DNA of 64,000 bases from Mobula hypostoma. Taxonomy: Eukaryota. Numbering within the stretch: the first letter of the stretch is position 1; every line of letters begins with the position of its first letter. Where the stretch lies: assembly GCF_963921235.1 (NCBI RefSeq), contig NC_086118.1, forward strand, positions 59,210,001 through 59,274,000. Reading direction: 5' to 3'. Under the pieces are notes generated by a model, which saw only the letters and a list, made by a program, of their open reading frames with translations, was not told the origin of the DNA and searched no databases. Both the position numbers and the translations under genes were made by a program. This document shows positions 21,019-53,039 of the stretch, piece by piece.

Positions 21019-21150
<132 letters not shown>

Positions 21151-21399: not shown

Positions 21400-21786
<387 letters not shown>

Positions 21787-23825: not shown

Positions 23826-24026
<201 letters not shown>

Positions 24027-25520: not shown

Positions 25521-25667
25521 CTTTTCTCCGCCACTGATGCTCAGGTTCAGATTCTTCAGCACCAGGTCCAGGCCCTCTCTGTATCGGACACAGTATCCCT
25601 TGAATTCCACCTTCCCCATCTCTGGCCATGATTTGTCCGGGCGATTGGCCTCAATCTCCCAGGGTGC
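25521..25667 (-). CDS. ABCC3: ABCC3 exon 27 (147 bp)
   Basis: Encodes APWEIEANRPDKSWPEMGKVEFKGYCVRYREGLDLVLKNLNLSISGGEK. Confidence 0.95.
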
Positions 25668-26149
25668 CTGCAATGAAGCAACAGGAAAGGCTCAGGGTAA
25701 CAGCGGCCTCTGATGGTGACTCCCCATCAGTGCATGGCCACCCACCAGCACAATTTGAAGTCAGGGCCAAGGGGTCTGCTCCAAACGCCAACAACAGTTA
25801 TGGAGGCACCGGTGCACAAGATCAGAGGAAGCTGAGGCTTGAAAACTGAGCCAGCTTCATCATGGATACCAACCTCCTCACCATTGAGGACACTTTAAAA
25901 AGGCAGCATCTGTTATTAAGGATCCTTGCCACCCTGTTCTCATCAGTTCCATCAGAGAGGAGGTGCAGGACCTGTTGACTCAACATTTTAGGAAGAGCTT
26001 CTTCCCCTATGCAATCAGACTGCTGAACAAACGGTCCATGAAAACAACCTTAATATTTTGGTCTCTCTGCACTATTTATTTTTAAATATATATATGCTTA
26101 CTGCAATTTTTATGTATTACACTGTAGAGTCAGAGAAGTCCACCACAGA

Positions 26150-29100
26150 AGCAGGCCCTTCAGTTCCATCTATGCCATGCCAAAACCATTTTAAACTCCC
26201 ATCAACCGCACCAGGACCGTATCCCTACCATCCATGTATCTGTCCAAACTTCTCTTAAACTTTGAAAGCAACCTTGCATGCACCACTTGTGCTGGCAGCT
26301 CATTCCACACTCCCACGAATAGGTTCCTGTACGTAGGTGACTAAAACTGCATACACAATACTCCAAACCAGGCCTCACCAACATCTTATACAACTTCAAC
26401 ATAACATCCCATCTCCTGTACTCGATACATGGAGAGTGACGTAGTTAATTCAGAAACAAAGGTTCTGAACTTAAAGAGGGGTAACTTTGAAGGTATGAGA
26501 CATGAATTAGCTAAGATAGACTGGCAAATGACACTTCAAGGATTGACGGTGGATATGCAATGGCAGGCATTTAAAGGTTGCATGGATGAACTACAACAAT
26601 TGTTCATCCCAGTTTGGCAAAAGAATAAATCAAGGAAGGTAGTGCACCCGTGGCTGACAAGAGAAATTAGGGATAGTATCAATTCCAAAGAAGTAGCATA
26701 CAAATTAGCCAGAGAAAGTGGCTCACCTGAGGACTGGGAGAAATTCAGAGTTCAGCAGAGGAGGACAAAGGGCTTAATTAGGAAGGGGAAAAAAGATTAT
26801 GAGAGAAAACTGGCAGAGAACATAAAAACGGACTGTAAAAGCTTTTATAGATATGTAAAAAGGAAAAGACTGATAAAGACAAATGTAGGTCCCCTGCAAA
26901 CAGAAACAGGTGAATTGATTATGGGGAGCAAGGACATGGCAGACCAATTGAATAATTACTTTGGTTCTGTCTTCACTAAGGAGGACATAAATAATCTTCC
27001 AGAAATAGTAAGGGACAGAGGGTCCAGTGAGATGGAGGAACTGAGCGAAATACATGTTAGTAGGGAAGTGGTGTTAGGTAAATTGAAGGGATTGAAGGCA
27101 GATAAATCCCCAGGGCCAGATGGTCTGCATCCCAGAGTGCTTAAGGAAGTGGCCCAAGAAATAGTGGATGCATTAGTGATAATTTTTCAAAACTCGTTAG
27201 ATTCTGGACTAGTTCCTGAGGATTGGAGGGTGGCTAATGTAACCCCACTTTTTAAAAAAGGAGGGAGAGAGAAACCGGGGAATTATAGGCCGGTTAGCCT
27301 AACGTCGGTGGTGGGGAAACTGCTGGAGTCAGTTATCAAGGATGTGATAACAGCACATTTGGAAAGCGGTGAAATGATCGGACAAAGTCAGCATGGATTT
27401 GTGAAAGGAAAATCATGTCTGACGAATCTCATAGAATTTTTTGAGGATGTAACTAGTAGGGTGGATAGGGGAGAACCAGTGGATGTGGTATATTTGGATT
27501 TTCAAAAGGCTTTTGACAAGGTCCCACATAGGAGATTAGTGTGCAAACTTAAAGCACACGGTATTGGGGGTAAGGTATTGGTGTGGGTGGAGAATTGGTT
27601 AGCAGACAGGAAGCAAAGAGTGGGAATAAACGGGACCTTTTCAGAATGGCAGGCGGTGACTAGTGGGGTACCGCAAGGCTCAGTGCTGGGACCCCAGTTG
27701 TTTACAATATATATTAATGACTTGGATGAGGGAATTAAATGCAGCATCTCCAAGTTTGCGGATGACACGAAGCTGGGTGGCAGTGTTAGCAGTGAGGAGG
27801 ATGCTAAGAGGATGCAGGGTGACTTGGATAGGTTGGGTGAGTGGGCAAACTCATGGCAGATGCAATTTAATGTGGATAAATGTGAAGTTATCCACTTTGG
27901 TGGCAAAAATAGGAAAACAGATTATTATCTAAATGGTGGCCGATTAGGAAAAGGGGAGGTGCAACGAGACCTGGGTGTCATTATACACCAGTCATTGAAA
28001 GTGGGCATGCAGGTACAGCAGGCGGTGAAAAAGGCGAACGGTATGCTGGCATTTATAGCGAGAGGATTCGAGTACAGGAGCAGGGAGGTACTACTGCAGT
28101 TGTACAAGGCCTTGGTGAGACCACACCTGGAGTATTGTGTGCAGTTTTGGTCCCCTAATCTGAGGAAAGACATCTTTGCCATAGAGGGAGTACAAAGAAG
28201 GTTCACCAGATTGATTCCTGGGATGGCAGGTCTTTCATATGAAGAAAGACTGGATGAACTGGGCTTGTACTCGTTGGAATTTAGAAGATTGAGGGGGGAT
28301 CTGATTGAAACGTATAAGATCCTAAAGGGATTGGACAGGCTAGATGCAGGAAGATTGTTCCCGATGTTGGGGAGGTCTAGAACGAGGGGTCACAGTTTGA
28401 GGATAGAGGGGAAGCCTTTTAGGACCGAGGTTAGGAAAAACTTCTTCACACAGAGAGTGGTGAATCTGTGGAATTCTCTGCCACAGCAAACTGTTGAGGC
28501 CAGTTCATTAGCTATGTTTAAAAGGAAGTTAGATATGGCCCTTGTGGCTACAGGGGTCAGGGGGTATGGAGGGAAGGCTGGGTTCTGAGTTGGATGATCA
28601 GCCATGATCATAATAAATGGCGGTGCAGGCTCGAAGGGCCGAATGGCCTACTCCTGCACCTATTTTCTATGTTTCTATGTTTCTATGATACATTGATTTA
28701 TGAAGGCCAGTGTGCAAAAGATTTCTTTACAACCCTATCTACCTGTGATGTAATTTTCAATTACAGACTGACCTGTATTCCCAGATCCCTTTGTTCTGCC
28801 ACACACCTCAGTGACCCCTACCAAGGTGTAAAATATCGCACTTGTCTGCATTAAGTCTCATCTGCCGTTTTGTTAGTTGATGCAGATCTCTCTGCAAGCC
28901 ATGAGATCACTGTCCACTACGCCCCTGATCTTGGTGTCATCTACAAGTTTGCTGATCCAGTTAACCACATTATCATCCAGATCATTGATACAGATGACAT
29001 AACAAAGGACCCAGAACCGATCCCTGCGGCACACTAGTCACAGGCCTCCAGTTAGATAGGCAACCATCTACTGACACTGGCTTCTCCCACAAAGCCAATG

Positions 29101-30810
29101 CTTCATCCAATTTACTACCTCATCCTGAATACCAAGTGACTGAACATTTTTGACCAACCTCCCATGCGGGGCCTTGTCAAATGCCTTACTAAAGTCCATG
29201 TAGACAACATCCACTGCCTTGCCTTCAACCATTTTCCTGGTAACTTCCTTGAAAAACTTGTAAGATTAGTTAGACATGACATGAACTAGTTAGACATTAG
29301 TTAGACATGCACAAAGTCATGCTGACTATCCTTAAGCAGTCTATACCTATCCAAATACTTATATATCCAGTCTCTTAGAATGCCTTCTAATAACTTCTAA
29401 TAACTAGCTGATGTCAGACTCACCTATAATTTCCTAGTTTATACTTAGAGCCTTTTTTAAACAGCAGATCAATATTGGCTATCCACCAATCCTCTGGTAC
29501 CTCTCATGTCACTAAGGATGATTTAAATATTTTCGCTAGGGCTCTAGGAATTTCTGCACTTGCTTCCTGTAGGGTTTGAGGGAACACCTTGTCAGGCCCT
29601 GGGGATTTATCCATCCTGATTTGCCTCCTCTAATCTGTACAAGATCCATGAAGTTAACATTGTATTGCCTCACTTCTATAGACTCTGTATCCATCTCCTG
29701 AGTAAATACAGATGCAAAAAAAATTTAAGATCTCCCCCGTCTGTCCTGGCTCCACACATGGACTACCATTCCATTCTTCCAGAGGACAACTTGTGTCCCT
29801 TGCAATCCTTTTGCTCTTCACTTATCTATAGAATGCCTTGGGATTCTCCTTCACCTTGTCTGTTAGAGCAACATCATGCCTTTTTTTCAGTCCTCCTGAT
29901 TTCTTTAGTGTTTTCTTGCATTGCTTATACTCCATGAGCACCTCACTTGTTCCTACCTGCCTATACCTTCTATGCACTTTTTTCCCCTTAACCAGGGCCT
30001 CAATAGCTCCTGAAAACCAACGTTCCCTACACCTGTTATCTTCACCTTTTACTCTGACAGGCACATACAAGCTTTGAACTCTCAAAATTTCACTTTTAAA
30101 GGCCTCTCACTTACAAAGTACATCTTTGCCAAAAAACAGCCTGCCCCAATCCACACTTGGCAGATAATTTCTGATAACATCAAAGTTGGCCTTACTCCAA
30201 TTTGGAATCTCAACCTGCGGGCCAGGTCTACATTTTTGCATATTTACTTTGAACCTAATGGCATTGTGGTCACTAAATGCAAAGTGTTCCCCTACACAAA
30301 CTTCCGTCACCTGCTCTGTCTCATTCCTAACAGCAGATCCAGTATCTCACTCTCTCTTGTTGGGACTTTACATATTGATGAAGGAAACTTTCCTGAGCAC
30401 ATTTGATAAACTCTGTCCCATCTAGTCCTTTTACAGTACTGGATTCCCGGTCAATATGTGGAAAGTTAAAATCACCTACTATAACAACCTTATGTTTCTT
30501 ACAACAGTCTGATCTCTCTACAGATTTGTTCCTCTAAGTCCCCAGGACTGTTGGGTGCTCTGTAATAGAACCCCATTAACATGGTCATACCTTTCTTATT
30601 TCTCAGTTCCACCCATAACGCCTCATTAGAGGAGTTCTCCAGCGTTTGCCTGAGCACTGCCGTGACATTTTCCCTTACTATCAACGCCACTCCTTTAACC
30701 CCTCCCACACTGTAACATCTAAAACAATGGATCCCCGGAATATTGAACCGCCAGTCCTGCCTCTCCTGCAAACAAGTCTCACTTAAAGGTGTTACTATCC
30801 CGGAGTCCCA
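26150..30810 (-). mobile_element. Old CR1 LINE, host of the young CR1 at 26431-28686
   Basis: Degenerate endonuclease (LWVELRNKKG...FYYRAPN, FSDHNAIRF) and RT remnants. The sequence is continuous across the insert. Confidence 0.75.
26431..28686 (+). mobile_element. Young 5'-truncated CR1 LINE with an uninterrupted ~719-aa ORF2 (RT), a (TTTCTATG)n tail and a 7-bp TSD
   Basis: Open frame 26429-28588 with all RT motifs. GATACAT is present at both 26424-26430 and 28687-28693. The endonuclease domain is missing. Confidence 0.95.
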
Positions 30811-31100
30811 CCAGCATCTCGGGGTCACCAGTGGTCACAGAAGCCCAACTGGTCTGGTTATATTAATGCACTGACTGCGAGAGATCAGTGCTGGGTACCG
30901 GGCAGGGAGTGCCACACCAAGGCCTCTGCACCATTTGCAGGGCATATGGGGAGATCTGCCAGGAAGTAGACAGGCAGAACAATTCTCTGCTGTGGGGGTA
31001 GGAGCCAGAACCGGGGTCTCTGCATTCACACTGATCTTACAGTAGGTTAAAGGGCTGGCACATGATGGGCTGAAGGGTCTGTACTATGATCCTGGTGTCA

Positions 31101-31214
<114 letters not shown>

Positions 31215-31570
31215 TCAGACAGAATTCTTGCAAGTGTGATGTGGAATATCTCAAGGTCCTCATACAGATTCACTCCCACCACCCACAACCCTGCAGAGCT
31301 CACCCATTGCTGAGGGGAGGGGCTACTGCCATGTTTGTGTCTCAGATTAGTTTTGACACAGTTCTTGTGTCACAGTCACATTGGTTGGAGGCCCAGAGGT
31401 GGCCTGTCCTGGGTCGGAAAGGGGTTGTTCTGCTGAACACTGTGACACCCACGGGCTGTGCCCAGCTCATCCTTGGGTTTTATTGGTTGTTAACACAAAC
31501 AACAAATTTCACCGTATTTCTCGATGTATACGTGGTAAATGAACCTGAGTCTGTATCTGCACGATGGCTA

Positions 31571-31792
<222 letters not shown>

Positions 31793-32661: not shown

Positions 32662-32952
<291 letters not shown>

Positions 32953-35219
32953 CTAGGCCGGGGGGTGGTGGTGTGGGTAGCAAGGGGCATGTTAGCAGAT
33001 GGCGGCACCCTCAGAAACATTAACCACACAGTCTGGGCTGCCACACAGTGGGGCAGATGCAGTAACCAGTGTTCCCTCCCCATGGGGCACAGACCCTGGG
33101 AACTTCGGGGCCAACAAACACACACACACACACACACACACACAGAGGCCACCTGCCCCCTCCTACTTGCTACCATCAGGAAGAGAAAAGTTCATCTCCT
33201 TCCTCAGCAGCCCCTCCCTGCACTAACCAAATACACAGAGTGACGGAGCCTTTGGCTACTCTGCCAATCCACTCCAGTCTGGGTGAGGATTTCTATCTAA
33301 TATCTGTTCCTTACACAGATTCTGCCCCGTAGTTCTAGAGACCCATCTTTCGAATCCATGTGTAAGTGTCCTTCACATTTCCAATGAGATCACTTTTTCT
33401 TTTAAACTGTCGAGATTTAAGTGCCCCAATTGTTGAACTCTATCTTGGTACAACTCCCTTCTCTCGGGAATCCATGTGTGAGACTTGGCCACACTCCCCC
33501 AATGCCACACCTGAATTTGGATTCCATCCCTTTGCAAGCCGTGGGTCCTGTGGTTTGATTCACTAAGTAAATACTGGTTGTAAATTTCAGGACCGTGTGT
33601 TCAAATTAGCTAATCATCCTCAGAACTCCTGAACTTACTTCATTATCAATGGTAGCAAGGCCAGACCAGTGCAGAGAGTTACAGGAGAGGTCCCTTCTGT
33701 AACTCCTGATGAAGGGTCTTGGCCTGAAATGTCAACTGTTTATTCATTTCCATAAATGCTACCTGACCTGCTGACTTTCTCCAGCACTTTGTGTGTGCTA
33801 CCCTCTATAACTCGAGCAGGACATCTTGCCTCTTGCAATAAAGGCCCACATATTGTTCCCTTGCGAAGACTGGACTGGAGGCCGAGAGTTGGCTGTCCTG
33901 GGGTTGGGGGCCTGACTGTGTGGGTGCAATGGGAAAAGGGGCTTGTTTTATAGTGTTCCTTTGGTATTGCTGCTTGTGTTCTGCTGAACGTTGTGGGCAT
34001 GGTATATTGGTATTGGTATATGTGCCAATACTTGCAGGCTGCCCCCAGCACATCCTTGGTTGTGCTGGTTGTTGCATTTCACTGTACCTGTGATAAATAA
34101 ATCTGAATCTAATCATTTCCCAGACCCAACTGTTGTAATTTCTTGTACACAATCGTTGGAACACTGGGGCTCTTTGACACATGCACTCACGCAGTCAGCA
34201 CGACAGGAAACACTACAACACCATCAGTAATCTTTGCCATCTGGTCTGGAGCTGAAGGATCAGCTCTTGCTGACACACTGACAGCTCAGAGTTGGCTTTA
34301 ATACCAAACTCCCTCAGGCACCGCTCTCCAGACGATTCACCGTCAGGAATTACTTGTCTGTTCAATCTGAAGTCTAATTCCGCCCAATGAAGCAGGCCGC
34401 GTTCTGTGGAGGTGTGCAGCTCTACCTCAGCCTTCCCCAGTGCTGTCCACAACATCTTTCAAACTCAGACAACTTGTACCTTCAGTGTGTCTGAGACAGA
34501 TGTGGTGTTAGAACAAGTGATCAAAACAACAGTCAGAGGGTTCTGAAGGAGGGGTGGGGAGCAGATAGGATGAGGAAGAAGGTTTCATACATGTAACCAG
34601 AGCTCTGGGCCCAGGCCGCTGAGGGAAAGGCTGACAGCCATGGAGCATTTGAATCTGGAGACTTTAGGCCAAAACCGGAAGAGTGGAGAGATGAAAGAGT
34701 TGAGTTACCAGGAGTGAGTGTAGAGGCTGTAGAAATGCTGAACCAGGGTCCCACGTTGCTCAGAGAATAAGGACTGACGGTGAACCTGTGGGCAGACTCA
34801 AGGATTTGGGGCCATTTCCAGCCCTGGGGGAAGGAGTCAGTGAGCGGCCATCAAGATTCCGCAGGGAGGCAGTACAGCGTTGTGAGGCAACCTCGAATCA
34901 GAATGGCAAGTCAGGAGTCAGGTGAGAGAGCAAGGATTGATGGGGTGAGGTCAAATGTATGGGGTTGGTCCATCTTGGTCTGGAGGGCAGTGATATGGCT
35001 GAATATGTCACTGGCTCTGGAGGTGAGCAAGAGGAACTTGAGGGACTACAGAGCCACGAGGGACAAGCCAACTGAGGACTAGAGGTGGTCAGGATGGACA
35101 CCCAACATCAGGGGAGAGCAGTGGCTCATCTCCCTTACACACAGCTTACCCCTACCGCACCACCAGGCATCACGCATGCACGCACACTCACTCACTCACA
35201 CACAGTACCAGAATACTGG

Positions 35220-36030
35220 AGGGGGAGAATGTTATTCAAGAAAAGTAATAGGGATAATATGGGAATTATAAAACAGTGAGTGGTATGTAACTGGAGGGCA
35301 AACTATTGGAAAGGATTCTTAGAGACAGGATTTCCGAGCATTTGGAGAAGCACAGTCTGACTGAGAATAGTCAACATGGCTTTGAGAGGGGTAGGTCATC
35401 CCTTACAAGCCTGATTGAATTTTTTGAGTCTACAATGATGAACGTAGAGCAGTAGATGTGGTGTATCTGGATTTTAGTTTGGCGTTCGACAGGATTCCCC
35501 ATGAAAGGCTCATTCAGAAAATGTGATTTTTGTAAATGATTTAGATGAGAAAGCAGAAAAATGGGTTAGTTAATTTGCAGATGTCATGAAGGTTGGTGGT
35601 GTGGGGGACAGGACATTGACAGGATGCAGAGCTGGGCTGAAAAGTGGCAGATGGAATTCAATCCAGAGAGGTGTGATGTGATTCACTTTGAAGGGCTGAA
35701 CTTGAAGGCAGAGTACAGGGTTAATGGCAGGGTTCCTAACAGTGTGGACAAACAAAGGGATCCCCAGCTCCCTCAAAGTTGCCACATATGTTGATAGGGT
35801 GGTTAAGAAGGCAAATCCATGTTGGTCTTCATTAGTCAAGGGATTGAGTTCAAGGGCAAGAAGGTTATGTTGCAGCTCTATAAAACCCTGGTTACACTAC
35901 ACTTGGAGTGTTGTGTTCAGTTCCGGTTGTCTTATTCTAGGAAGGATGTGGAAGCCTTGAAGAAGGTTCAGAGGAGATTTACCAGTGTGGATTACAGAGC
36001 ATGTCTGATGAGGATAGGTTGATCAAGCTA
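35220..36030 (+). mobile_element. Old CR1 RT fragment
   Basis: Remnant VMLQLYKTLVTLHLECCVQF. Confidence 0.7.
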
Positions 36031-37019
36031 CGGAGGGGGCTATGTGGGAGGGAAGGGTTACAGTGATCTTAGGCGAGATTGAAAGATCAACACATGTGGA
36101 CCGAGGGCCTCCACTGCATTGTTCTATATACACATCTCTCTTTCTCTTTCCCTCTCTCTCACTGTCTGGCCCTCTCCCTCTCCCCACACACATACAGTGA
36201 ACCATATGACGGTGAGTGGGGGCTCTCTGTGTAGTGTGACGGTGAGTGGGGGGTCAAGAATGAGAGAGGACAGCACAGGATACGCTGAAGCAAGTGCAGG
36301 TGCAACAGCTGGGAGGCCTTGAGCATGCAGTAACCCCTGGCCTGTGTGTGATGACAAGATCGTCAGCGGAGAAAGGCACAGAGCCACGCTGCCACAAGAC
36401 GGGCACCCTGGCATGAGCGAGTTGCGCTAAAGGCCCACGCACTGCCCCACTGTGCTGACCATAGGACAAAGGAGCAGAAATAGGCCATTGGCCCATTGTG
36501 TCTGCTCTGTCATTCCATCATGGCTGAACTAGTTTCCCTCTCAACCCTATTCCCCTGTCTTCTCTCTGTAACCTTTGAAACTTGACTAACCAAGAACCTA
36601 TCAATCTTCACTTTAAATATACCCAATGACTTGGCCTCCATATCCATCTGTGGCAATGAATTCCACAGATTCAGCACCCTCTAGCTGAAGAAATTCCTCC
36701 TCATCTCTATTCTGGATGGTTCTCCCTCTATTCTGAGGCTGTACCTCTCTGGAAATCTGTAACCGGCGGGGGTTGGGGAGAAGAGGAGCAGCATGTAGGC
36801 ATAGCATAGCAGCAGGCGAGAATACCTACTCCTGGGCACATCACCTCCTGAGGCAGGTTCTCAATGCAGAACACCAACCACACCCTGCCTTTACAAATGT
36901 CACTGTCTTGCCTGGTTCCTCCAGTCGTTAACCAGGCTGGGGCCCAGGTTGGAACTGGACAAACCCACCCACTCCAGGGAAAATCAGACACTCAACAGCC
37001 CAGTTACACCAAGACAGAT

Positions 37020-38045
37020 CTAGGGGCTCCTTCCAATAAGGGTTGGTGTTGGGATCACTTCTTTTAACGCTGTATACAGATGACGGAATAGATGGCTCTG
37101 TTGCCAGGTTTGCAGATGATACAAAGATTGGTGGAGGGGCAGGTAGTGTAGAGGAAACAGGTTGGATGCAGAAGGATTTAGACAGATTAGGGGAATGGGC
37201 AAGGAAGTAGCAAATGAAATACAATGTTGGAAAATGCATGGTCATGCACTTTGGTAGTAGAAATAAACGTGCAGACTATTTTCTAAATGGGGAGAAAATC
37301 CAGGAATCTGAGATGCAGAGGGAGTTCGAAGTCCTTGTGCAGAACGCCCTAAAGGTTAACTTACAGGTTGAGTCAGTGGTGAGGAAGGCAAATACCATCT
37401 TAGTGTTCATTTCAAGAGGTCTAGAATACAAGAGCAGGGATGTGATGCTGAGGCTTTATAAGGCACTGGTGAGGCCTCACCTTGAGTATTGTGAACAGTT
37501 TTGGGTCCCTGATCTTAGAAAAGATGTACTGGCATTGGAGAGGGTCTAGAGGAGGTTCACAAGGAAGATTCTAGGACTTAAAGGATTATCATACGAGGAA
37601 TGTTTGATGGCTCTGGATCTGTACTCACTAGAATTTAGAAGGATGAGGGGGGGATCTCATTGAAACCTTTCAAATGTCGAAAGACCTAGACAGAGTAGAT
37701 GTGGAACAGATGTTTCCCATGGTGGGACAGTCTAGGACAAGAGGGCACAACCTCAGGATAGAGGGGCGCCCTTTCAAAACAGAGATGCGGAGAAATTTCT
37801 TTAACCAAAGGGTGGTGAATTTGTGGAATTTATTGTCACATGCAGCTGTTAAGGCCAGTTTGCTGGGTATCTTTAAGGCAGAGATTGATAGTTTCTTGAT
37901 TGGACATGGCATCAAAGGTTATGGGGAAAAGGCCAGAAATTGGGGTTGAGGAGGAGATTTAAAAAAGATCAGCCATGATTGAATGGAGGAGCAGACCTCG
38001 ATGGGCCAGAAGCCCTAATTCTGCTCCTATGTCTTATGGTCTAAT
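37020..38045 (+). mobile_element. CR1 LINE 3' fragment
   Basis: FADDTKIG and LYKALVRPHLEYC motifs plus a CR1 3' UTR. Confidence 0.8.
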
Positions 38046-38770
38046 ACCAGGCACTGCTCACACTGAGCAGGTTACGGAGGAGTGGGAAGCTGCCTGTAGC
38101 AGCACAGCGGGGAGATGCAGGAGGGAAGAACGCCGGACAGGAGGAGGAGCAGACATGAGTGAATGAGAGGGATGGCCACGGTAGCACAACACTATTACAG
38201 CTTGGGGCACCAGAGTTCAGAGTTCAATTCCAAAGTCAGCTATAAGGAGTTTGTACATCCACCCCATGAAATGTGTAGGTTTCCTCTGGGTGACTTGGTT
38301 TCCTCCCACGGTGCAAAGATGTACCAGTTAGTGGGTGAATTGGTGATTGTAAATTGTCCTGTGATTAGGCTGGGGGTAAGTGGCCAGTTGCTCGGCGGTG
38401 CAGCTCAGAGGGCTGGAAGGTTGTATCTCTGTGTCTTCAGAAGTGCATCTTCCTTGAATTACCACAGCTGCTTTGACCCAGCCACCCACTGCCCTCATAC
38501 TAGATGGGAGGTTACTGGATACACTCGCTCTCAGAAACTAATACAGAAAGGTCGGCCCTCCCTCACACAGCGACTCCCTTTCAAATAGCAGGTTGTTTAA
38601 AATGTTGAATAAATCTGGGGAAACAGTTGCAGTGGGTTCACAGTCAAAGTGTCCCTCAGCCTGAGGGTTTATCCCTTGGCTATCTGTGATGGTCCCAGTT
38701 CTGGCTAGGGGCTGCCCTCTCCTACCTGACTCTCCCCCCCACCCCCCCCAACCCCAGGTTCCCCTAGTAC

Positions 38771-39084
38771 CTGCAGAGAGAAGTAAAGGCAGGCAACAGG
38801 AATAGACGGCAGCATGCTGAGTGGGATGAAGTGAGCCAGCACTAGCAAGGTGGACAGAACTTCAAAGAAGCAGAGCAGGAAGTCCTCCGCACAGGCCGGG
38901 ATCCGGTTGTCGATGGTGTCCACGTCCTGTGAGAAGCGGTTCATAATTCGGCCGGCTGGGGTCAGCTCAAAGAACTGCATGGGACAGCGGAGGGTGTGGT
39001 TAAGCAGGTGAGCATGCAGGAGGCTAGAGGCACGGACACAGCACACTACAAATAGCAGATGTGACGTAACGTAGGACAGCGCGC
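38771..39084 (-). CDS. ABCC3: Duplicate ABCC3 exon 23 ('23b', 314 bp), candidate mutually exclusive exon
   Basis: Stop-free: (G)ALSYVTSHLLFVVCCVRASSLLHAHLLNHTLRCPMQFFELTPAGRIMNRFSQDVDTIDNRIPACAEDFLLCFFEVLSTLLVLAHFIPLSMLPSIPVACLYFSLQ. Acceptor ccctgttctcatccacag with a TAAC branch-like motif; donor CAG|GTACTA. Phase 1 to phase 0, the same as exon 23a. Confidence 0.85.
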
Positions 39085-40089
39085 CTGTGGATGAGAACAG
39101 GGTGTTACTGCCCCAAAGAACCATCAGAGGATCTGAACAATACCCAACAATACCTTGGGCTCTCCACGGACACTGACAGGGAGATGGGCATAACTTTGTT
39201 TGCCTATTTTCTTACAAAAACATGTTTAATATAAATTATACTCTTCAATACCACACCAGAGACAAAGACTGACTAACAAAAACTAAATTAAAATATTCCC
39301 ATCACAAACAAGAGAAAACCTGCAGATGCTGTAAATTCAGAACAACACACGCAAAATGCTGGAGAAACTCAGAAGGTCAGACAGCATCTGTGGAAAAGAG
39401 TGATCAGTTGACGTTTCAGGCTGACAACCTTCATGAGGACCTGATGCCTCAAAGCATCGACTGTTTACTCTTTTCCACCGATGCTGCCTGACCTGCTGAG
39501 TTCCTCCAGCATTTTGTTTGGGTTGGTACTCCCTGTCAAGAAGGGCACTTATCCCCTGCAGTGCCCAATGATCCCAGAATTCCTCCTTGGTACCCACGGA
39601 CACTGTTGTGCCCTCTCCACAGTAATCCAAGCACAGACAATACCTCTGGAACATCACCTGGCAGTTGGCCCAGTCAGAACCCCCCGCTGCCCACATCCAG
39701 GACCCATGGATAGCAACCCTTGCTAACCTCAGGATGGAGTCTGCTAGGACTACTGGATGACTGCATAGAAATTTGGTGGGGCCATCCCTACTTGCCCTGG
39801 GATTATGACAGGACATTACAATTGTTTTGTTGTCATCTGTGATATGTTGCAGGAGCTTTCAAGAGACAGTGGGAAGGATAAAATGTGTAAGGCTGGGGAA
39901 CAAACAGCAGCTGCAGGGCAGGTTTAAGCAGCTGACTGATGCAACACTCTCCTGCCCTGAATGTTCCCCTCAATCTCTGACCTTCCCTCCAGTTTCCAAG
40001 TCACTCACGAAAACATCTTCACCCGACATTCTTGGTGCTGTCTGCATTAACAATTCTCATCACCTGTCTCGGTCAGAATAATATGATGA

Positions 40090-41050
40090 GACAGTGTGGA
40101 GGGAGTTTCACTCTGTGTCTGACCCTGGAGTGTGTGATGGGATGGTGTGGAGGGAGATTCACTCTGTGTCTAACCCTGAGAGTGTGTGATGGGACGGTGT
40201 GGAGGGAGCTTCATTCTGTGTCTGACCCTGGAGTGTGTGATGGGACGGTGTGGAGGGAGCTTCATTCTGTGTCTGACCCTGGGAGTGTGTGATGGGATGG
40301 TGTGGAGGGAGCTTCATTCTGTGTCTGACCCTGGGAGTGTGTGATGGGATGGTGTGGAGGGAGTATCACTCTATGTCTAACCCCGGGAGTGTGTGGAGGG
40401 AGATTCACTCTGTGTCTAACCCTGAGAGTGTGTGATGGGATGGTGTGGAGGGAGATTCACTCTGTGTCTGACCCCGGGAGTGTGTGATGGGACGGTGTGG
40501 AGGGAGATTCTCTCTATGTCTAACCCCGGGAGTGTGTGGAGGGAGATTCACTCTGTGTCTGACCCCGGGAGTGTGTGATGGGACGGTGTGGAGGGAGATT
40601 CTCTCTATGTCTAACCCCGGGAGTGTGTGGAGGGAGATTCACTCTGTGTCTAACCCTGGGAGTGTGTGATGGGATGGTGTGGAGGGAGCTTCACTCTGTG
40701 TCTGACCCCGGGAGTGTGTGATGGGACGGTGTGGAGGGAGCTTCACTCTGTCTGACCCTGGAGTGTGTGATGGGACAGTATGGAGGGAGATTCACTCTGT
40801 GTCTGACCCCGGGAGTGTGTGATGGGACGGTGTGGAGGGAGATTCTCTCTATGTCTAACCCCGGGAGTGTGTGGAGGGAGATTCACTCTGTGTCTAACCC
40901 TGGGAGTGTGTGATGGGATGGTGTGGAGGGAGCTTCACTCTGTGTCTGACCCCGGGAGTGTGTGATGGGACGGTGTGGAGGGAGCTTCACTCTGTCTGAC
41001 CCTGGAGTGTGTGATGGGACAGTATGGAGGGAGCCTCACTCTGTGTCTGA
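40090..41050. repeat. Minisatellite, unit about 51 bp with shorter variants
   Basis: Tandem GGGAGTGTGTGATGGGACGGTGTGGAGGGAGCTTCACTCTGTGTCTGACCC-like units. Confidence 0.9.
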
Positions 41051-41805
41051 CTCATTCTAACAGGTTGGCTCAATATTTAAGAGCCAGAGAGACTGAATCA
41101 TACAGCACAAATACAGACCATTCAGCCCACCAACTCTGCATTTATACAAATTGCACTTGTAAGTGTGTAAGTAGCAGCCATCAGGTTCTGACCCCTGCAG
41201 TAACAGGCTCCCTAAGTGGCCAGGCTCAAACCCCTGCAGTAACGGGCTCTCTGACTGGTCAGGCCGTCAGGTTCCGAACCCCTGCAGTAACGGATTCTCC
41301 AACTGGTCAGGGTGTCAGGTTCTGATCACCTGTAGTAATGGGCTCTCTAACTGGTCAGGAGCCCCATGAACTGATCCCTTACCTGTCTAAACCAAAAGGT
41401 TCAGTACAACATTGTGGGCTGAATGGCCTGTTACTGTACTGTTCTATGCTCTATGTTTGTGGGATACAATCTTCTATCACCCCTCACAGTGTGCACCACA
41501 CAGCCACCACACTCTGTATAAAACCTTACCTCTAATACCCCCCTGTAATTTCCTCCAATCACCTTAAAATTATGGCCCCTCGTATTAGCCATTTCCACCC
41601 TGGGAAAATGTCTTTGTCTGTCCACTCGATCTATGCCTCTTATCATCTTGTACACCTCTATCAAGTCTCCTCTCACCCTAGCTCACTCAACTTGTCCTCA
41701 TAAAACATGCTCTCTAATCCAGAAGCATGCTGGTAAATCTCCTCTGCACCCTCTCTAAAGCTTCCACATCCTTCCTATGATAGTTGACCAGAAATGAACA
41801 CAATA

Positions 41806-44340
41806 TTCCGAATCGAGAAGCCAGCTCTGATCCCAGCTCTCATCCATGTCGGGTCTTCACCGTCCCCTCTGACCCTTCCCTCTCTGAGGCAGAACGTTCT
41901 GTCCTAAGTAAGGGCCTCACCTTTGACCCCTGTGCCCACACGTCACTGAGTTCCACGACCACCAAGAAGCTGAGTTCTTCTTCTGCTGCCTCTGTCTCTG
42001 TGCCTATTTCTTTGGCAAGGACTCTCCACCCCGCAATGATAACCCTCCTCCTCTTCCTAGACACCCCAGCCTGCTGCCTGCTCTGGACTTTTTCACTGCC
42101 AACTGCCGATGGACATCAACCATCTCAACTTCATACTCCTCTCTCCAATTCCAACTTCACTCCCCAAATGCCCAGCTCTCCACTCCCTCCACACCAATCC
42201 TAACCTCACCATCAAACTCGCAGATAAGGGAGGTGCTGTAGTAATCTAGCACACTGACCTCTACCTGCTGAGGCCAAGCACCAACTCTCAGACACCTCCT
42301 CTTATTTACCCCTTGAACAGGACCCCATTGAGGAACACCAGGCCATTGTCTCCTACACCATCACCAATCTTATTGGCGCTGGGGATCTCCCATCCACTGC
42401 CACCAACCTCATCGTTCCCACACCCTGCACCTCCCATTTCTACTACCTATCCAAAATCCACAAACCCATTTGTCCAGGTAGACACATTGTTTCAGCTTGT
42501 TCCTGAGCCTCTGAACTCATATATGCACACCTCGACTCTAATTTTATCCCCCTGATCCAGTCCCTTCCCACCTACATCCATGACACCTGACACACTTTGG
42601 ATCTTTTCAATGATTTCAAGTTCCCTGGCCCCCATCACCTTATTTTTACTGTGGATGTCCAATCTCTTTACACCTCCATACCCCACCAGGAAGACCTCAA
42701 AGCTCTTAGTTTCTTTCTGGACACCAGACCCAACCAGTACCTCTCCACCACCACTCTCCTCTGCCTAGTGGAACTTGTCCTTATTTTAAATAATTTCTCC
42801 TTTGGCTCCTCCCACTTCCTTCAAACAAAAGGTGTGTGTCCATTGGCACTCACACGGGTCCCAGCTATGCCTGCCTTTTTGTTGGCTACATGGAACAGTC
42901 TATGTTCCAAGCCCACACTAGTGCCCGTCCACACTTTTCCTACGCTACATCGACAACTGCATTGGTGCTGCTTCTTGCACTCATGCTGAACGCGTCAATT
43001 TCATCCACTCTGCCTCCAACTTATACCCTGCCCTCACATTTACCTGGTTTATTTCTGACACCTCCCTCCCCTTTCTCGATCTCACTGTCTCTATCTCTGG
43101 AGATAGCTTATCTATTGATGCCTATTACAAACCCATGGACTCTCACAGTTACCTGGACTATTCCTCCTCCCACCCTGTTACTTGTAAAAACACTATCCCC
43201 TTCTCTCAATTCTTCCATCTCTGCTGCATCTGCTCTCAGGATGAGGCATTTCATTCCAGAACGAAGGAGATGTCCTCCTTCTACAAAGAAAGAGGCTTCC
43301 CTTCTTCCGCTGCCCTCAACCACATCTCTTCCATTTCATGCATGTCTGCTCTCACCCCATCCTCCCGCCACCCCACCAGGGATGAGGTTCCTCTTGTCCT
43401 CACCTACCACCCCACCAGCCTCCGTGTCCAACACATAATTCTCTGCAATTTCTGCCATTTCCAATGGGATCCCACCACCAAGCACATCTTTCCCTCCCCT
43501 CCCTTCTGCTTTCTGCAAGGATCGCTCCCTACGCGACTCCTTGTCCATTCGTCCCTCCCCACTGATCTCCCTCCTAGCACGTATCCTTGCAAGTGGAACA
43601 AGTGCTACACCTGTCCCTACACCACCTCTCTCACTACCATTCAGGGCCCCAAACAGTCCTTCCAGGTGAGGCAACACTTCGCCTGTGAGTCTGGTAAGGT
43701 TATGTACTGTGTCCGGTGCTCCTGGTGTGGCCTTCTGTACATCTGTGAGACCTGACGTAGACTGGGAGACCGCTTTGCCGAGCACCTACGCTCCATCCGT
43801 CAGAAAAAGCGGTATCTCATATTTTAATTCCACTCCCCATTCCATTATGTCTATCCATGGCCTCCTCTACTGTCAAGATGAAGCCACACTCAGTTTGGAG
43901 GAACAACACCTTATATTCTATCTGAGTAGCCTCCAATCTAATGGCATGAACAGTGATTTCTCGAACTTCTGATAATGCCTCCCCCCCTCCTTCACCATTC
44001 CCCATCCCCTTTTCCCTCTCTCACCACCCATCACCTCCCTCTGGTGCTCCTCCCCCTCTTCTTTCATCCATGGCATTCTGTCCTCTCCTATCAGTCTCCT
44101 CCTTCTCCAGGCCCTGTACCTCTTTCACCAATCAACTTCCCAGCTCTTTACTTCACCCCTCCCCCTCGCAGTTTCACCTACCACCTTGTGTTTCTCTCTC
44201 CCTTTCCCCCACCTTTAAAATCTATTCCTCGGCTTTTTTTCTCTAGTCTTGTTGAAGGGTTTCTGGCCAAAAAGTCAACCGTACATTTCTCCATAGATGC
44301 TGCCTGGCCTGCTGAGTTCCTCCAGCATTTTGTGTGTTGC
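41806..44340 (+). mobile_element. Penelope-like retroelement (RT and GIY-YIG endonuclease), degenerate
   Basis: LSEAERSVLSKGL, FTVDVQSLYTSIP, GPSYACLFVGYMEQ and GIY-YIG-like VMYCVRCSWCGLLYICET...RFAEHL. Its terminal segment GCTGCCTGGCCTGCTGAGTTCCTCCAGCA recurs elsewhere in the window. Confidence 0.85.
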
Positions 44341-46109
44341 AACAATATTCCAAGTGTGGTCTAACAAAGGTTTTATAGAGCTGCAGAGTTACCTTGTGGC
44401 TCTTGAACTCAATGCCCTGCCTAATGAAGGCCACACACCGTATACCTTAATCACTGAACAAATTGTGCAGCAGCTTTGAGGGATCTATGGATGTGGAACC
44501 GCAAGATTCCTATGTTAAGAATCTTGCCATGAACTCTGTATTCTGCCTTCAAGTTCAACCTCACAAAATAAATCACCTTACACTTTATAGGATTGAATTC
44601 CGTCTCCCCGAGGTGAAACCAGTTCATAAGAATATCCACGTGTAGTAAATGACTCCTTCCCTCCCAAGGGTGATGCCTGAGTTACTGCGGTCTATCTTGC
44701 TGACTGGGGTTGGACCGGACAGTCACACTGCACGACTACCTGCTTGTAGTGGGGAGAGCCTCCCGTTTCGGCAGACATGTTAAAGCACCGACTTCTCCCT
44801 TCTCAGGCTCTGTATGATGTGGACCAGGCAGCCCTCTCTCATCAGGTAGCAGTGGGGAGCTGGAGGGGGATGTAGATAGTTTTTGCCTTTTCCCCCAGGG
44901 CACATGTTAATGACATAATCTACATCCTCATATGCAAGTGACAGTGTCAGGTGAGATCACATTGTGAGCTGCTGGAACTTCAACTCCACCGGGTGAAGCG
45001 GCTTTCAGAGTGTCAGTGATGTGTGTGAGGCAGAGGGAGGAGGGAGATACTGACGGAGGAGGGGGCAGAGAAGATTCCACACACAGAAGGTATGCTGGAA
45101 AGGTATGAGAGGCAACACAATACTCAGTCTCATCTACACTCCCACCCCTCCAAACCACTGGTACTGACCCAACACACATCTGCAGGACACACGCAGCTCA
45201 GTTCTGCTCAGCTTCACCAGAAGTATGCTTCAAGCAGAGAGACATGGATCACAATACATTACAGCACAATACAGGTCTTTCGTCCCACAATGTCGTGCTG
45301 ATTTTTTAACCCACTCCAAAATCTCTCCTTCCCACATAGCCCTCTATTTTTCTATCACCCATTCACTATCTAAGAGCCTCTTAAATGTCCCTAATGTTTC
45401 TACTTCGGCCAGTAACCATTGCAGGGCATTCCACGCACCACCATTCTGTGTGAAATACCTATGTCTGACAGCAGTCCCTTTACTTTCCCCCAGTCACCTT
45501 AAAATTATGACCCTTGTATTAGCCATTTCCGCCCTGGGAAAGAAATCCATAATACCACAGGCTGCAGGAGCAGAGTTAGGCCATTCAGCCCATCAAGTCA
45601 GCTGCACCATTCCACCATGGCCGATTTATTATCCCTCTCAACCCCATTCTCCTGCCTTTTCCCCGCGATCTTTGATGCTCTGACTAATCAAGAACATATC
45701 ATCCTCCGCTTGGTCTCCCTACGGGCCTGCAGTAATGAATTTCACAGATTCACTACTGTCTGACTGAAGAAATTCCTCCTCATTTCTGTTCTAAAGAAGC
45801 ATCCCTCTATTCTGATGCTGTGCCCTCCGGTCCTCAACTCCCCCAGTCTATCGAGGCCTTTCAACATTCAATAGGTTTCAGTGAAATCCCCCTCATTCTT
45901 CTAAACTCTAATGAGTACACACACACACACAGACATCAAACGCTCCTCACACATTAACCCTTTCATTGCCAGGATCATTCTCATGACCCTCCTCTGCAGC
46001 CTCTCCTGAGAATGAGAGGTGGTGGACGATGGAACCACGAGCGATCGGGGTTTCACTGTGGAGGGACACAGTGATGGGAACAGATACAGAACAACTGCAT
46101 GGATTGACA

Positions 46110-46975
46110 AGACATTCCCTCAGTGACCCCTCTCCCCCAGCACCCTGTATCACTGCCTATCCCCATTGACCTTAACCCAACTGCCTCACACTGTCCCTCA
46201 GTGACCCCTCTCCCCCAGAACCCTGTGACACTAACTGTATCCCCACTGACGTTAACCCAGCTCCCTCACACTGTCCCTCAGTGACCCCTCTCCCCCAGCA
46301 CCCTGTATCACTGCCTATCCCCATTGACCTTAACCCAACTGCCTCACACTGTCTCTCAGTGACCTCTCTCCCCCAGCGCCGTGTCACTGACTGTATCCCC
46401 ACTGACGTGAATCTTGCTCCCTCACACCATCCCTCAGTGACCCCTCTCCACAGCCTCGTGTCACTGACTGTATCCCTACTGCCTGTGACACTAACTGTAT
46501 CCCCACTGCCGTTAACCCAGCTCCCTCACACTGTCCACAGTGACCCCTCTCCCCAGCGCCGTGTCACTGACTGTCCCCACTGACATTAACCCAGCTCCCT
46601 TGCACTGTCTCTCAGTGACCCCTCTCCCCCAGAACCGTGTCACTGACTGTATCCCTACTGCCTGTGTCACTAACTGTATCCCTACTGACATTAACCCAGC
46701 TCCCTCACACCATCTCTCAGTGACCCCTCCCAGTGCCGTGTCACTGACACTAACCCAGCTCCCTTGCACTATCTCTCAGTGACCCCTCTCCCCCAGTGTC
46801 CTGACACTGAGTGTATCCCTACTGACATTAACCCAGCTCCCTCACACCGTCTCTCAGTGACCCCTCTCCCCCAGAACCCTGTGTCACTGACTGTATCCCT
46901 ACTGACGTTAACCCAGCTCCTTCACACCGTCTCTCAGTGACCCCTCCCCAGTGCCCTGTGTCACTGACATGAACC
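46110..46975. repeat. Irregular minisatellite (units about 60-76 bp) just downstream of the ABCC3 exon 23a donor
   Basis: Tandem CTCAGTGACCCCTCTCCCCCAG...TGTCACTGACTGTATCCC...TTAACCCAGCTCCCTCACAC units. Confidence 0.85.
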
Positions 46976-47121
46976 CAACTCCTGTGTTCCCAGGTCTGGG
47001 AGTCAACTGGGAACCTTTGGTCGCTAAGGTGGAGGCAGTGGGTTGTATCTGGCAGAGTCCGCAATCGTTTGCTACAGCAGAGGTTGCCTGTGTGAAGATG
47101 GAGAGATGGTTTGGAAGATAC

Positions 47122-47432
47122 CTGAACGAGAATGTAGACCAGGACCAGTGGCACTATGATTAAAGTGAACCACGGTGTGCTGATCATGATTACTATCATT
47201 GTGGACAGGGAGATGAAGAATGTTGCGAGGAACATCTGGAATGTGATTGGGATCACTTCGTCAATCACGTTAATGTCCTTGCCGAAGCGATTGATGATGC
47301 GCCCGATGGGTGTGGTGTCATAGAATGCCTGAGGTGTGTGCAACTTGTTGTCCAAGAGCTGTGAGTGGAGCTGCCGCGCAGCACCCAGGCCTCCGACCAT
47401 CAGTGTGAAGGAGGCGATCATTACTAGCAACC
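47122..47432 (-). CDS. ABCC3: ABCC3 exon 23 ('23a', 311 bp), TM13-TM15 region, canonical copy
   Basis: Encodes (G)LLVMIASFTLMVGGLGAARQLHSQLLDNKLHTPQAFYDTTPIGRIINRFGKDINVIDEVIP...LVYILVQ. The NKxxxPQ motif is ABCC3-like. Confidence 0.95.
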
Positions 47433-52233: not shown

Positions 52234-52264
52234 AAATGGTGGCATGGCCCCAGGGTGTACTCAC

Positions 52265-52418
52265 CCTGCCTGTCTCTGCCTTCTCAGCCTGGATCAGTTT
52301 ACTTGGTTCAGACGCCGCAGCTGGGAGAGTCTCCACCTGTTTTGTCTTTTGGCTAAGTCGCTTTCTTGTGGACTTCCGTGTCGATGCTTCTCCGTCGGAA
52401 GAAAGGACACTGATCTGT
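52265..52418 (-). CDS. ABCC3: ABCC3 exon 21 (154 bp), NBD1-TMD2 linker
   Basis: Encodes (R)QISVLSSDGEASTRKSTRKRLSQK...KLIQAEKAETGR, close to ABCC3 QLSALSSDGE. Donor agg|gtgagt. Confidence 0.9.
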
Positions 52419-53039
52419 CTAATATCACAGAAAGCACACAAATATTAGACTATACGATACAGAAGCAGAATTAGGCCATTTGTCCATCGAGTCTGCTCCA
52501 CCATTTCATCATGACTGATCCAATTTTCTTCTCAGCCCCACTCTTCTGCCTTCTCCCCATATCCCTTCATGCCGTGACCAATCAAGAATCTATCAACCTC
52601 TGCCTTAAATATACATAAAGACTTGACCTCCACAGCTGCCTGTGGAAAAGAAGTCCACACATTCACCCCCCTCCTCATCTCTGTTCTAAAAGGATGCCCC
52701 TCTATTCTGAGGCAGTGTCCTCTGGCCTTTCCCATCAGAGGTAACATCCTTTCCACATCCCGGTATCAGGTAGGGAGTGTTGAGGGGAAAGAGGTTACAG
52801 CTGTAGTCCACAGGTCAGCAGGACAGGGAAGTGGGAGGAGAGAATGAACCCAGTGAACCGTGGTTCACCTGAGTCAGAAAGACTTAAAACTTTGGCTCTA
52901 TTTGTCACATACCCACCAAAACATCGAGGCATACAGTGAAATATGTTGTATGCCGGGGGCAGTCTGCAAGTGTCGCCATGCTTACACCACCAGCATAGTG
53001 TGTCCACTACTTACTAACCCTAACCTCACCTGCACTACC

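What the first reader, a model, noticed from the sequence alone, without database searches (positions are those of the whole stretch)
38771..47432. ABCC3 carries two versions of exon 23: a candidate mutually exclusive exon pair that swaps the TM13-15 region
Seen in sequence: between exon 22 (48222-48429) and exon 24 (32663-32862) lie two stop-free exons of 311 and 314 bp. Both run phase 1 to phase 0, both have AG/GT ends, and both begin with the split Gly and end in Q. By hand alignment they share about 36/103 aa (about 35%), concentrated in LH..LL, P..F...TP.GRI.NRF..D...ID..IP and FL..FF..LST. An exon this diverged that still keeps its frame, splice sites and family motifs, amid decayed transposons, implies long-term purifying selection. 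No other exon in the window has an intact duplicate, so this is not a tandem gene copy. From recall, human ABCC3 has one such exon. Inference: one gene makes two transporters with different pore-lining helices. Novelty is unverified, as automated fish annotations may already list such isoforms.
Basis: partly seen in the sequence, partly recalled or inferred. Interest (0 to 1): 0.93.

Follow-up and report, generated by a model that had tools for sequence, protein, structure and literature searches.

The report
Ancient alternative exon pair in ABCC3
The export-pump gene ABCC3 of this cartilaginous fish carries two interchangeable versions of one exon; gene annotations already list the same pair for many ray-finned fishes, so it is real and very old but not a new kind of thing.

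Summary
On the minus strand, between exon 22 and exon 24 of an ABCC3 orthologue, lie two stop-free homologous exons: 23a (47432-47122, 311 nt) and 23b (39084-38771, 314 nt). Both have AG/GT ends and the same phases. No other exon has a second copy in the window.

Including exactly one keeps the frame. Including both gives a stop 12 codons into 23b, and skipping both shifts the frame.

The same pair exists in ray-finned fishes. A grenadier ABCC3 locus has an a exon of 311 nt followed by a b exon of 314 nt. RefSeq isoform pairs in six species checked, from bichirs to teleosts, differ only in this cassette (104 against 103 codons). So the arrangement most likely predates the split of cartilaginous and bony fishes, and automated annotation already lists it. 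I found no paper describing it.

Use in this species is not proven. The one same-species RNA contig reads unspliced through the 23b acceptor. Contigs from two related species leave exactly at the 23b donor. 23b is very diverged (35-41% identity to fish b exons) but keeps coding composition and 20 of 24 family-conserved positions.

Verdict: a real, ancient mutually exclusive exon pair; a new member of a known kind; moderate interest.

The parts
52262..52423 (-). ABCC3 exon upstream of exon 22 (approximate limits, from the protein match only)
   Evidence: tblastn with Polypterus ABCC3 residues 907-960, 50% identity
48222..48429 (-). ABCC3 exon 22 (208 nt); ends with the first G of a split Gly codon
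   Evidence: 69% identity to Polypterus ABCC3
47122..47432 (-). Exon 23a, 311 nt, 103 codons, the ABCC3-type version; fully held in RNA runs of the same species
   Evidence: human ABCC3 best match, 105 bits; word share 1.00 in X3, X4, X12, X13; inside the a-type clade, 100/99
39085..47121 (-). Intron between 23a and 23b (8 kb), repeat-rich; includes a 52-nt tandem array at 40084-41051 and arrays at 46116-46968
38771..39084 (-). Exon 23b, 314 nt, 104 codons, the alternative version; acceptor ...ctcatccacag|G, weak donor CAG|gtacta
   Evidence: (contigs of organisms B and C stop matching at 38771/38770)
32863..38770 (-). Intron between 23b and exon 24 (5.9 kb), mostly high-copy repeats
   Evidence: word depths in the thousands over 35294-38477
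32663..32862 (-). ABCC3 exon 24 (200 nt), starts in phase 0 with CGT = R
   Evidence: 87% identity to Polypterus ABCC3
21022..31783 (-). ABCC3 exons 25-31 (about 31781-31655, 31208-31107, 25670-25518, 24556-24359, 23996-23826, 21693-21496, 21129-21022), including the second ATP-binding domain and the C-terminus
   Evidence: 54-97% identity to Polypterus ABCC3

Best explanation
The gene is the ABCC3 (MRP3) orthologue of a cartilaginous fish. Exons 23a and 23b are the two members of an old tandem exon duplication that is spliced in a mutually exclusive way. The pre-mRNA joins exon 22 to either 23a or 23b and then to exon 24. Both lengths are 2 mod 3, so taking both or neither shifts the frame and gives an early stop. 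Such transcripts would be expected to be removed by nonsense-mediated decay, leaving only single-inclusion mRNAs productive. The cassette encodes the cytoplasmic end of TM13, the intracellular loop with the conserved TP.GR..NRF..D motif, TM14 and the start of TM15. The two proteins are therefore identical except for about 104 residues that line part of the translocation path and touch the ATP-binding domains. The pair is the same one that ray-finned fishes carry and that their annotations list as ABCC3 isoforms, so it most likely arose before cartilaginous and bony fishes split. 23a is the main form in the tissues sampled, and 23b is a minor or tissue-restricted form.

Shown: the anatomy, the frame logic, the fish counterpart, and use of the donor site in relatives. 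Inferred: productive use in this species, orthology of 23b with the fish b exon, and a functional difference between the isoforms.
For: Anatomy and frame. Both included gives a stop 12 codons into 23b; both skipped gives stops in exon 24. Both alternative exons have weaker donors (gtatct, gtacta) than their neighbours (gtaagg, gtgagt, gtaaga).

Gene identity: 23a scores best to human ABCC3 (105 bits, against 82 for ABCC2). The window's exons are 54-97% identical to Polypterus ABCC3. 23a sits inside the fish a-type clade with 100/99 support.

Fish counterpart: the grenadier model KAG7275222.1 holds an a and a b copy in tandem. Its locus has an a exon at 50208-50518 (311 nt) and a b exon at 51458-51771 (314 nt), with a upstream of b. 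More than 110 of the 120 listed ray-finned-fish proteins named ABCC3 or its older name carry the b exon. RefSeq isoform pairs in Polypterus, Erpetoichthys, Gadus, Esox, Amphiprion and Pseudorasbora are identical outside the cassette and differ by one residue in length. The extra codon of b lies at the very start of the exon in both lineages.

Constraint on 23b: it keeps 20 of 24 columns that are at least 85% conserved in 27 relatives. GC at codon positions 1/2/3 is 0.59/0.38/0.70, like the other exons. It differs from organism B at 5 of 315 letters with no gap. In organisms C and D the contigs covering the exon show about 6% differences with few gaps, whereas intron contigs show about 9% differences with many gaps.

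RNA: the organism B contig matches 38771-39085 and then has 27 letters that do not fit the intron. It ends one base past the acceptor; that base is a G shared by the intron, exon 22 and exon 23a, which is what a branch point in the assembly graph would give. The organism C contig stops matching at 38770 and has 333 further letters. The DNA contig of organism D runs on through the donor into the intron.
Against: The only same-species contig over 23b (X1, 38896-39202, no differences) reads 118 nt through the acceptor into the intron. X1 holds other intron pieces at similar depth, so it shows no splicing. The organism C contig also reads 33 nt past the acceptor, and that run has intron contigs at similar depth.

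The unmatched letters beyond the donor were not printed, so the partner exon is not known. A 23a-23b double inclusion cannot be told from a 22-23b junction.

The runs are only guessed to be RNA.

No protein fragment joining 23b to exon 22 or 24 was found in the protein collection.

23b is only 35-41% identical to fish b exons. It is a long lone branch that the free tree does not join to them.

23b words are held by far fewer species' runs than 23a words.

Four family-conserved positions are changed, more than the 0-2 changed in the four comparison sequences.
Confidence: 0.7

Rival explanations
1. 23b is a relic: an old alternative exon that this lineage no longer uses productively. It would be either silent or included only as a frame-breaking 'poison' exon that lowers ABCC3 output. 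It would stay open only because cartilaginous fishes evolve slowly, or because loss of use is recent.
For: The same-species contig is unspliced. The terminal branch is long at 1.35 changes per column, and 4 of 24 conserved positions are changed. The donor gtacta is weak. 23b words are held by few species, whereas 23a words are held by many. Teleost RefSeq sets also list truncated products that end inside or just after the b exon, so unproductive use of this exon does occur elsewhere.
Against: The 104-codon frame, both splice sites and the coding-type GC3/GC2 contrast are all kept. The conserved core motif is kept while variable positions differ. The exon is better conserved than the flanking intron in organisms C and D, with almost no gaps. 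Contigs of two relatives leave exactly at the donor.
Confidence: 0.2
2. The pair in this genome and the pair in ray-finned fishes arose by two independent duplications of exon 23. Under this reading 23b is not the orthologue of the fish b exon, and the pair is younger than the split of the two groups.
For: The free maximum-likelihood tree does not unite 23b with the fish b clade. Identity is 35-41%, no higher than to invertebrate MRPs at 43-44%. Tandem duplication of this same region has happened independently in arthropods, as shown by the Blattella and Molorchus models with three copies and by PMC9741552.
Against: The order is the same (a then b, both between exons 22 and 24). The lengths are identical at 311 and 314 nt, and the extra codon is at the same end. 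The AU test does not reject a 23b plus fish-b clade (log-likelihood only 0.16 lower, p 0.46).
Confidence: 0.08
3. 23b is an assembly error, or a stray exon of another ABCC gene (its best solved-structure match is ABCC2) placed in the ABCC3 intron.
For: 23b scores 74-76 bits to ABCC2 but only 52 bits to ABCC3 among solved structures.
Against: A same-species contig and a DNA contig of another species are collinear with the window across the exon and its flanks. No other ABCC-like exon lies nearby. Ray-finned fishes have the same layout. With more sequences the ABCC2 likeness fades: 42% to catfish ABCC2 against 44% to a tardigrade MRP1.
Confidence: 0.02

Closest known systems
ABCC3 exon-23 a/b isoforms annotated in ray-finned fishes (for example Polypterus senegalus XP_039595447.1/XP_039595448.1, Esox lucius XP_010893754.2/XP_010893755.2, Gadus morhua XP_030195268.1/XP_030195269.1)
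   Same: Same gene, and the same place between exons 22 and 24. The order is the same (a upstream of b). The exon lengths are the same, 311 and 314 nt in the grenadier locus. The b cassette is one residue longer, and the proteins are otherwise identical.
   Different: The window's b version is only 35-41% identical to the fish b versions, which are 68-83% alike among themselves. The intron between a and b is 8 kb here, against about 0.9 kb in the grenadier. Use in mRNA is not yet shown for this species.
Mutually exclusive exon clusters of invertebrate MRP genes (Drosophila mrp/dMRP CG6214, C. elegans mrp-1) and the tandem duplicated exon event of human ABCC9
   Same: These are tandem duplicated homologous exons in ABCC transporters that swap part of a membrane domain (PMC9741552; the dMRP '8a 4b isoform', PMC6185855). 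Cockroach and beetle gene models carry three tandem copies of the region homologous to residues about 5-80 of exon 23.
   Different: The origins are independent. The fly cluster has eight alternatives, against two here. The invertebrate copies cover a shorter piece. Choice in the invertebrate MRP clusters is, from my recall of Yue et al. 2017 (not read here), ascribed to competing RNA pairings, which I did not test. The ABCC9 event lies elsewhere in the protein: by recall it is the last exon, giving SUR2A/SUR2B.
Vertebrate mutually exclusive exon pairs kept in frame by length, such as CaV1.2 exons 8/8a
   Same: Two homologous exons encode alternative versions of a membrane segment, and one of the two is taken per transcript (PMC3060452, listed).
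   Different: Different protein family. Regulators are known for CaV1.2 (PTB) and none is known here.

Membership tests
Mutually exclusive tandem-duplicated exon pair | Two neighbouring exons that are homologous to each other | tested here: met
   38% identity over 92-93 residues, E about 3e-18. Both match the same part of PF00664.
Mutually exclusive tandem-duplicated exon pair | Same phases, similar length and usable splice sites on both | tested here: met
   311 and 314 nt, both phase 1 to 0, AG/GT on both.
Mutually exclusive tandem-duplicated exon pair | Only single inclusion gives an open frame | tested here: met
   Both included gives a stop 12 codons into 23b. Neither included gives stops in exon 24.
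Mutually exclusive tandem-duplicated exon pair | Transcripts carry one or the other, never both, in this species | tested here: inconclusive
   23a is fully held in same-species RNA runs. For 23b, the same-species contig is unspliced. Contigs of organisms B and C leave at the donor, but their partner exon is unseen. In ray-finned fishes the annotated isoforms carry one or the other.
Mutually exclusive tandem-duplicated exon pair | Both copies conserved across species | tested here: met
   The a and b exons are present from bichirs to teleosts. 23b is 98.4% identical in organism B. In organisms C and D the exon-bearing contigs differ less, and with far fewer gaps, than the intron contigs; the positions of the differences were not shown.
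ABCC3 (MRP3) orthologue | Closer to ABCC3 than to ABCC1, ABCC2 or other ABCC proteins | tested here: met
   23a: human ABCC3 105 bits, ABCC2 82, ABCC1 73. The exons are 54-97% identical to Polypterus ABCC3. 23a lies in the a-type clade with 100/99 support.
Orthologue of the ray-finned-fish ABCC3 b exon | Same position, order and length | tested here: met
   Downstream of a and upstream of exon 24, 314 nt in both, with the extra codon at the exon's start.
Orthologue of the ray-finned-fish ABCC3 b exon | Groups with fish b exons in a tree | tested here: inconclusive
   Not joined in the free tree. The AU test does not reject the joint clade (p 0.46). Only 103 columns are available and both branches are long.
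RNA-pairing-controlled exon cluster (Dscam / invertebrate MRP type) | A docking site and selector sequences that pair in the pre-mRNA | not tested
   The introns here are repeat-rich, and no orthologous intron sequences were available for a covariation test.

The most novel reading that the evidence does not exclude
The a/b pair arose before cartilaginous and bony fishes split and has been kept for over 400 million years by my recall of the dating. It was lost, or has gone unannotated, on the way to land vertebrates. The b version has been rebuilt separately in each lineage; here TM14 carries the acidic residues E, D and E in ..IPACAEDFLLCFFEV... ABCC3 of fishes would then carry a built-in swappable module that retunes the substrate pocket. 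A more extreme version, that the b type predates ABCC3 itself, is not excluded by the unresolved tree but has no positive support.
Probability: 0.4. Interest if true: 0.6.

Novelty: new member of a known kind. Interest (0 to 1): 0.45.

Why it matters
ABCC3 exports bile salts, glucuronides and drugs from liver and gut cells. A natural pair of interchangeable cassettes covering TM14 and the coupling loop gives two pumps that differ in about 100 residues and nothing else. That makes a ready-made experiment on what sets substrate choice and coupling in long MRPs.

If the pair goes back to the common ancestor of cartilaginous and bony fishes, it joins the small set of very old vertebrate exon-substitution events. 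It would also raise the question of why land vertebrates appear to manage without it.

Practically, some non-RefSeq fish gene models wrongly include both exons (for example KAG7275222.1 and eight others). Fish ABCC3 expression studies should distinguish the two isoforms.

Tried and rejected
1. I searched for protein fragments joining 23b to exon 22 or 24, first with 23b alone and then with a scaffolded alignment of 23b, exon 24 and exon 25. No hit was closer than about 52% identity, so this gave no splice proof.

3. I first took the 333 unmatched letters of the organism C contig to equal exon 24 plus exon 25. Exon 25 is 127 nt, not 132, so the match is not exact and I dropped the argument.

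4. I considered 'DVDTID' and 'FFE' as shared derived marks of b exons. I rejected this because invertebrate MRPs and ABCC1 carry similar motifs.

5. The ABCC2 likeness of 23b suggested an ABCC2-derived exon. It was not upheld with more sequences, and the tree is unresolved.

6. Nine literature searches (paper check) found no description of a vertebrate ABCC3 exon-23 pair.

7. I could not check whether the annotation of this species already lists a 23b isoform. The N-terminal exons lie outside the window, so no exact full-length protein could be looked up. Nine of the 129 hits were not shown.

8. The species was not verified. Other notes of this scan call it a stingray.
Full report
**The observation**

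The window carries the 3' part of a gene on the minus strand. Its exons match ABCC proteins at 52423-52262, 48429-48222, 47432-47122, 39084-38771, 32862-32663 and then seven more, down to 21129-21022.

- 23a is 311 nt, flanked by ...caccgcag| and |gtatct.
- 23b is 314 nt, flanked by ...atccacag| and |gtacta.

Read in phase 1 they give 103 and 104 codons without a stop. Both complete a Gly codon started by the last G of exon 22, and both end in Q. Each scores as the same part of the ABC transporter membrane domain, PF00664 positions 58-156/158, at 57 and 66 bits.

tblastn of each against the window finds the other at 38% identity, E about 3e-18. The peptides of exons 22 and 24-31 find nothing else in the window. 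So this is a single-exon duplicate, not a decayed gene copy.

An open frame alone would be weak evidence. The sense strand of the 14 kb between 23a and exon 24 holds ten open stretches of 104 codons or more. What exceeds chance is the homology together with the exact splice sites and phases.

**What the gene is**

- 23a scores best to human ABCC3 among solved structures: 105 bits, against 82 for ABCC2 and 73 for ABCC1.
- Against Polypterus ABCC3 the window's exons are 54-97% identical.
- In a tree of this segment, 23a sits inside the ray-finned-fish ABCC3 a-type clade with 100/99 support.

I did not verify the species. Other notes of this scan call the genome a stingray. The position of 23a outside all ray-finned-fish a exons is consistent with a cartilaginous fish.

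**Frame logic**

Exon 22 joined to 23a or to 23b and then to exon 24 reads through. Including both gives a stop 12 codons into 23b, and skipping both gives stops in exon 24. Only single inclusion is productive, which is the usual arrangement for vertebrate mutually exclusive pairs. Both alternative exons have weaker donors (gtatct, gtacta) than their neighbours (gtaagg, gtgagt, gtaaga).

**The key result: the same pair exists in ray-finned fishes and is already annotated**

A search of 1.8 billion representative proteins with 23b found no close match; the best were about 50% identical. It did turn up gene models with two or three tandem copies of this region.

One of them, KAG7275222.1 of the grenadier Coryphaenoides rupestris, is an ABCC3 model. 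It carries an a-type copy at residues 997-1099 (64% identical to 23a), then a second copy at 1108-1214, then exon 24.

Its genomic locus shows an a exon of 311 nt (L001 50208-50518) followed, 0.9 kb downstream, by a b exon of 314 nt (51458-51771). Both have AG/GT ends. These are the same two lengths, in the same order, as in the window.

Searching with the grenadier b copy returned 129 proteins. The 120 listed are all from ray-finned fishes, and most are named ABCC3 or its older name. They carry a b exon at 66-83% identity and include bichir relatives, tarpon, arowana, carps, characins, pike, salmonids, cod and many spiny-rayed fishes.

Cluster members gave isoform pairs from one gene in six species: Polypterus, Erpetoichthys, Gadus, Esox, Amphiprion and Pseudorasbora. 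Each pair is identical before and after the cassette and differs by one residue in length. Nine models, eight of them non-RefSeq, wrongly include both exons.

Nine literature searches found no paper that describes it. A survey of human events does not mention ABCC genes. A later one names only ABCC9, together with the fly and worm MRP genes.

**Is 23b the orthologue of the fish b exon?**

Position, order, the 314-nt length and the placement of the extra codon at the very start of the exon all agree.

Sequence does not decide the question. 23b is 35-41% identical to fish b exons, about the same as to a exons (32-35%) and slightly less than to some invertebrate MRPs (43-44%).

In the maximum-likelihood tree the fish b exons form one clade on a long stem, and 23b is a long lone branch in an unresolved part. 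Forcing 23b together with the fish b exons costs only 0.16 log-likelihood units (AU p 0.46).

I therefore take orthology as likely on structural grounds and not shown by sequence. The higher score of 23b to ABCC2 among solved structures did not hold up as a sign of ABCC2 origin once more sequences were compared.

**Is 23b under constraint and used here?**

In favour of constraint:
- It keeps 20 of the 24 columns that are at least 85% conserved among 27 relatives. The core P..FF..TP.GR..NRF..D....D...P is kept, while the variable membrane positions differ.
- Its GC content by codon position is 0.59/0.38/0.70, like the gene's other exons.
- It differs from organism B at 5 of 315 letters without gaps.
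- In organisms C and D, the contigs over the exon show about 6% differences and 1 and 8 gaps. Intron contigs of the same runs show about 9% differences and 23-55 gaps.

Against:
- Four conserved positions are changed, more than the 0-2 changed in the comparison sequences.
- Its words are held by runs of far fewer species than those of 23a.

RNA evidence is mixed.
- **Same species.** 23a is fully held in four runs. The only contig over 23b (X1, 38896-39202, no differences) runs 118 nt through the acceptor into the intron. That run holds other intron pieces at similar depth. So splicing of 23b is not shown in this species.
- **Organism B.** A 342-nt contig matches exactly 38771-39085. Its other 27 letters do not fit the intron beyond the donor. 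It ends one base past the acceptor; that base is a G shared by the intron, exon 22 and exon 23a, as expected if the assembly graph branches there.
- **Organism C.** A 682-nt contig stops matching at 38770 with 333 letters to spare, but it also reads 33 nt past the acceptor.
- **Organism D.** The DNA contig runs through the donor into the intron, so the start of that intron can be aligned between these species.

I read this as use of the 23b donor in two relatives. The partner exon is unseen, and the runs are only guessed to be RNA.

**Mechanism proposed**

One gene yields two full-length pumps that differ only in the cassette. By the alignment to solved ABCC2 and ABCC3 structures (residues 1025-1126 of human ABCC3), the cassette corresponds to four parts:
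- the cytoplasmic end of TM13;
- the intracellular loop with the conserved motif;
- TM14;
- the start of TM15.

From what I recall of MRP1 structures and mutants, TM14 contributes to the substrate pocket and the loop contacts an ATP-binding domain. The swap is therefore likely to change substrate preference or coupling. That step is inference.

**Comparison with known systems and verdict**

Tandem duplicated, mutually exclusive exons are known in ABCC genes of flies and worms, and in human ABCC9 (PMC9741552; the dMRP '8a 4b isoform', PMC6185855). Cockroach and beetle models show three tandem copies of part of this same region. The window's pair is a further member of that kind and very probably the cartilaginous-fish counterpart of the pair already annotated in ray-finned fishes.

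The finding is real, and its interpretation is supported. Its novelty is limited to three points: extending the pair to cartilaginous fishes, the strong divergence of the b version, and the apparent lack of any published description.

Noticed in passing
window 40084-41051: A tandem array of 52-nt units (also scored at periods of 39, 91, 101 and 143) lies in the intron between 23a and 23b. Further arrays with periods of 15-179 nt (mostly 78-179) lie at 46116-46968.
   Followed up: no
window 50400-50760 (within about 50000-52000): A C-rich minisatellite of roughly 38-nt units (catcagaccccggaaaccccaaccccaccccg...) lies in the intron upstream of exon 22. It explains the GC content of 0.675 and the extreme skews of that bin.
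   Followed up: partly
window 35294-38477 and 39274-39671: Word depths in the thousands to hundreds of thousands appear in all four runs, RNA and DNA alike, with many contigs under 90% alike. These are high-copy transposon families shared by several related species and present in RNA libraries.
   Followed up: no
window 38478-38676: No contig of any of the four runs, including the DNA run, lies on this stretch just downstream of 23b. A G-rich run follows the donor at about 38725-38764. This may be a species-specific insertion or the effect of a filter.
   Followed up: no
Proteins P0415 (Esox X3) and P0422 (Acanthochromis X3), against their X1 isoforms: RefSeq lists truncated ABCC3 products that end at the same spot inside the b exon (...DIWMRTF) in two distant teleosts. 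Another (P0434, Megalobrama X3) ends at the close of exon 24. This hints at recurrent unproductive splicing around the b exon.
   Followed up: partly
Proteins P0280-P0288 and P0004: Nine deposited fish gene models (eight non-RefSeq, one named as an isoform X3), plus the grenadier model, include both the a and the b exon in one protein. Given the frame logic these are annotation errors.
   Followed up: yes
Proteins P0001 (Blattella germanica) and P0003 (Molorchus minor): These insect MRP gene models carry three tandem copies of the region homologous to residues about 5-80 of exon 23. They are probably alternative exon clusters read through by the gene predictor.
   Followed up: partly
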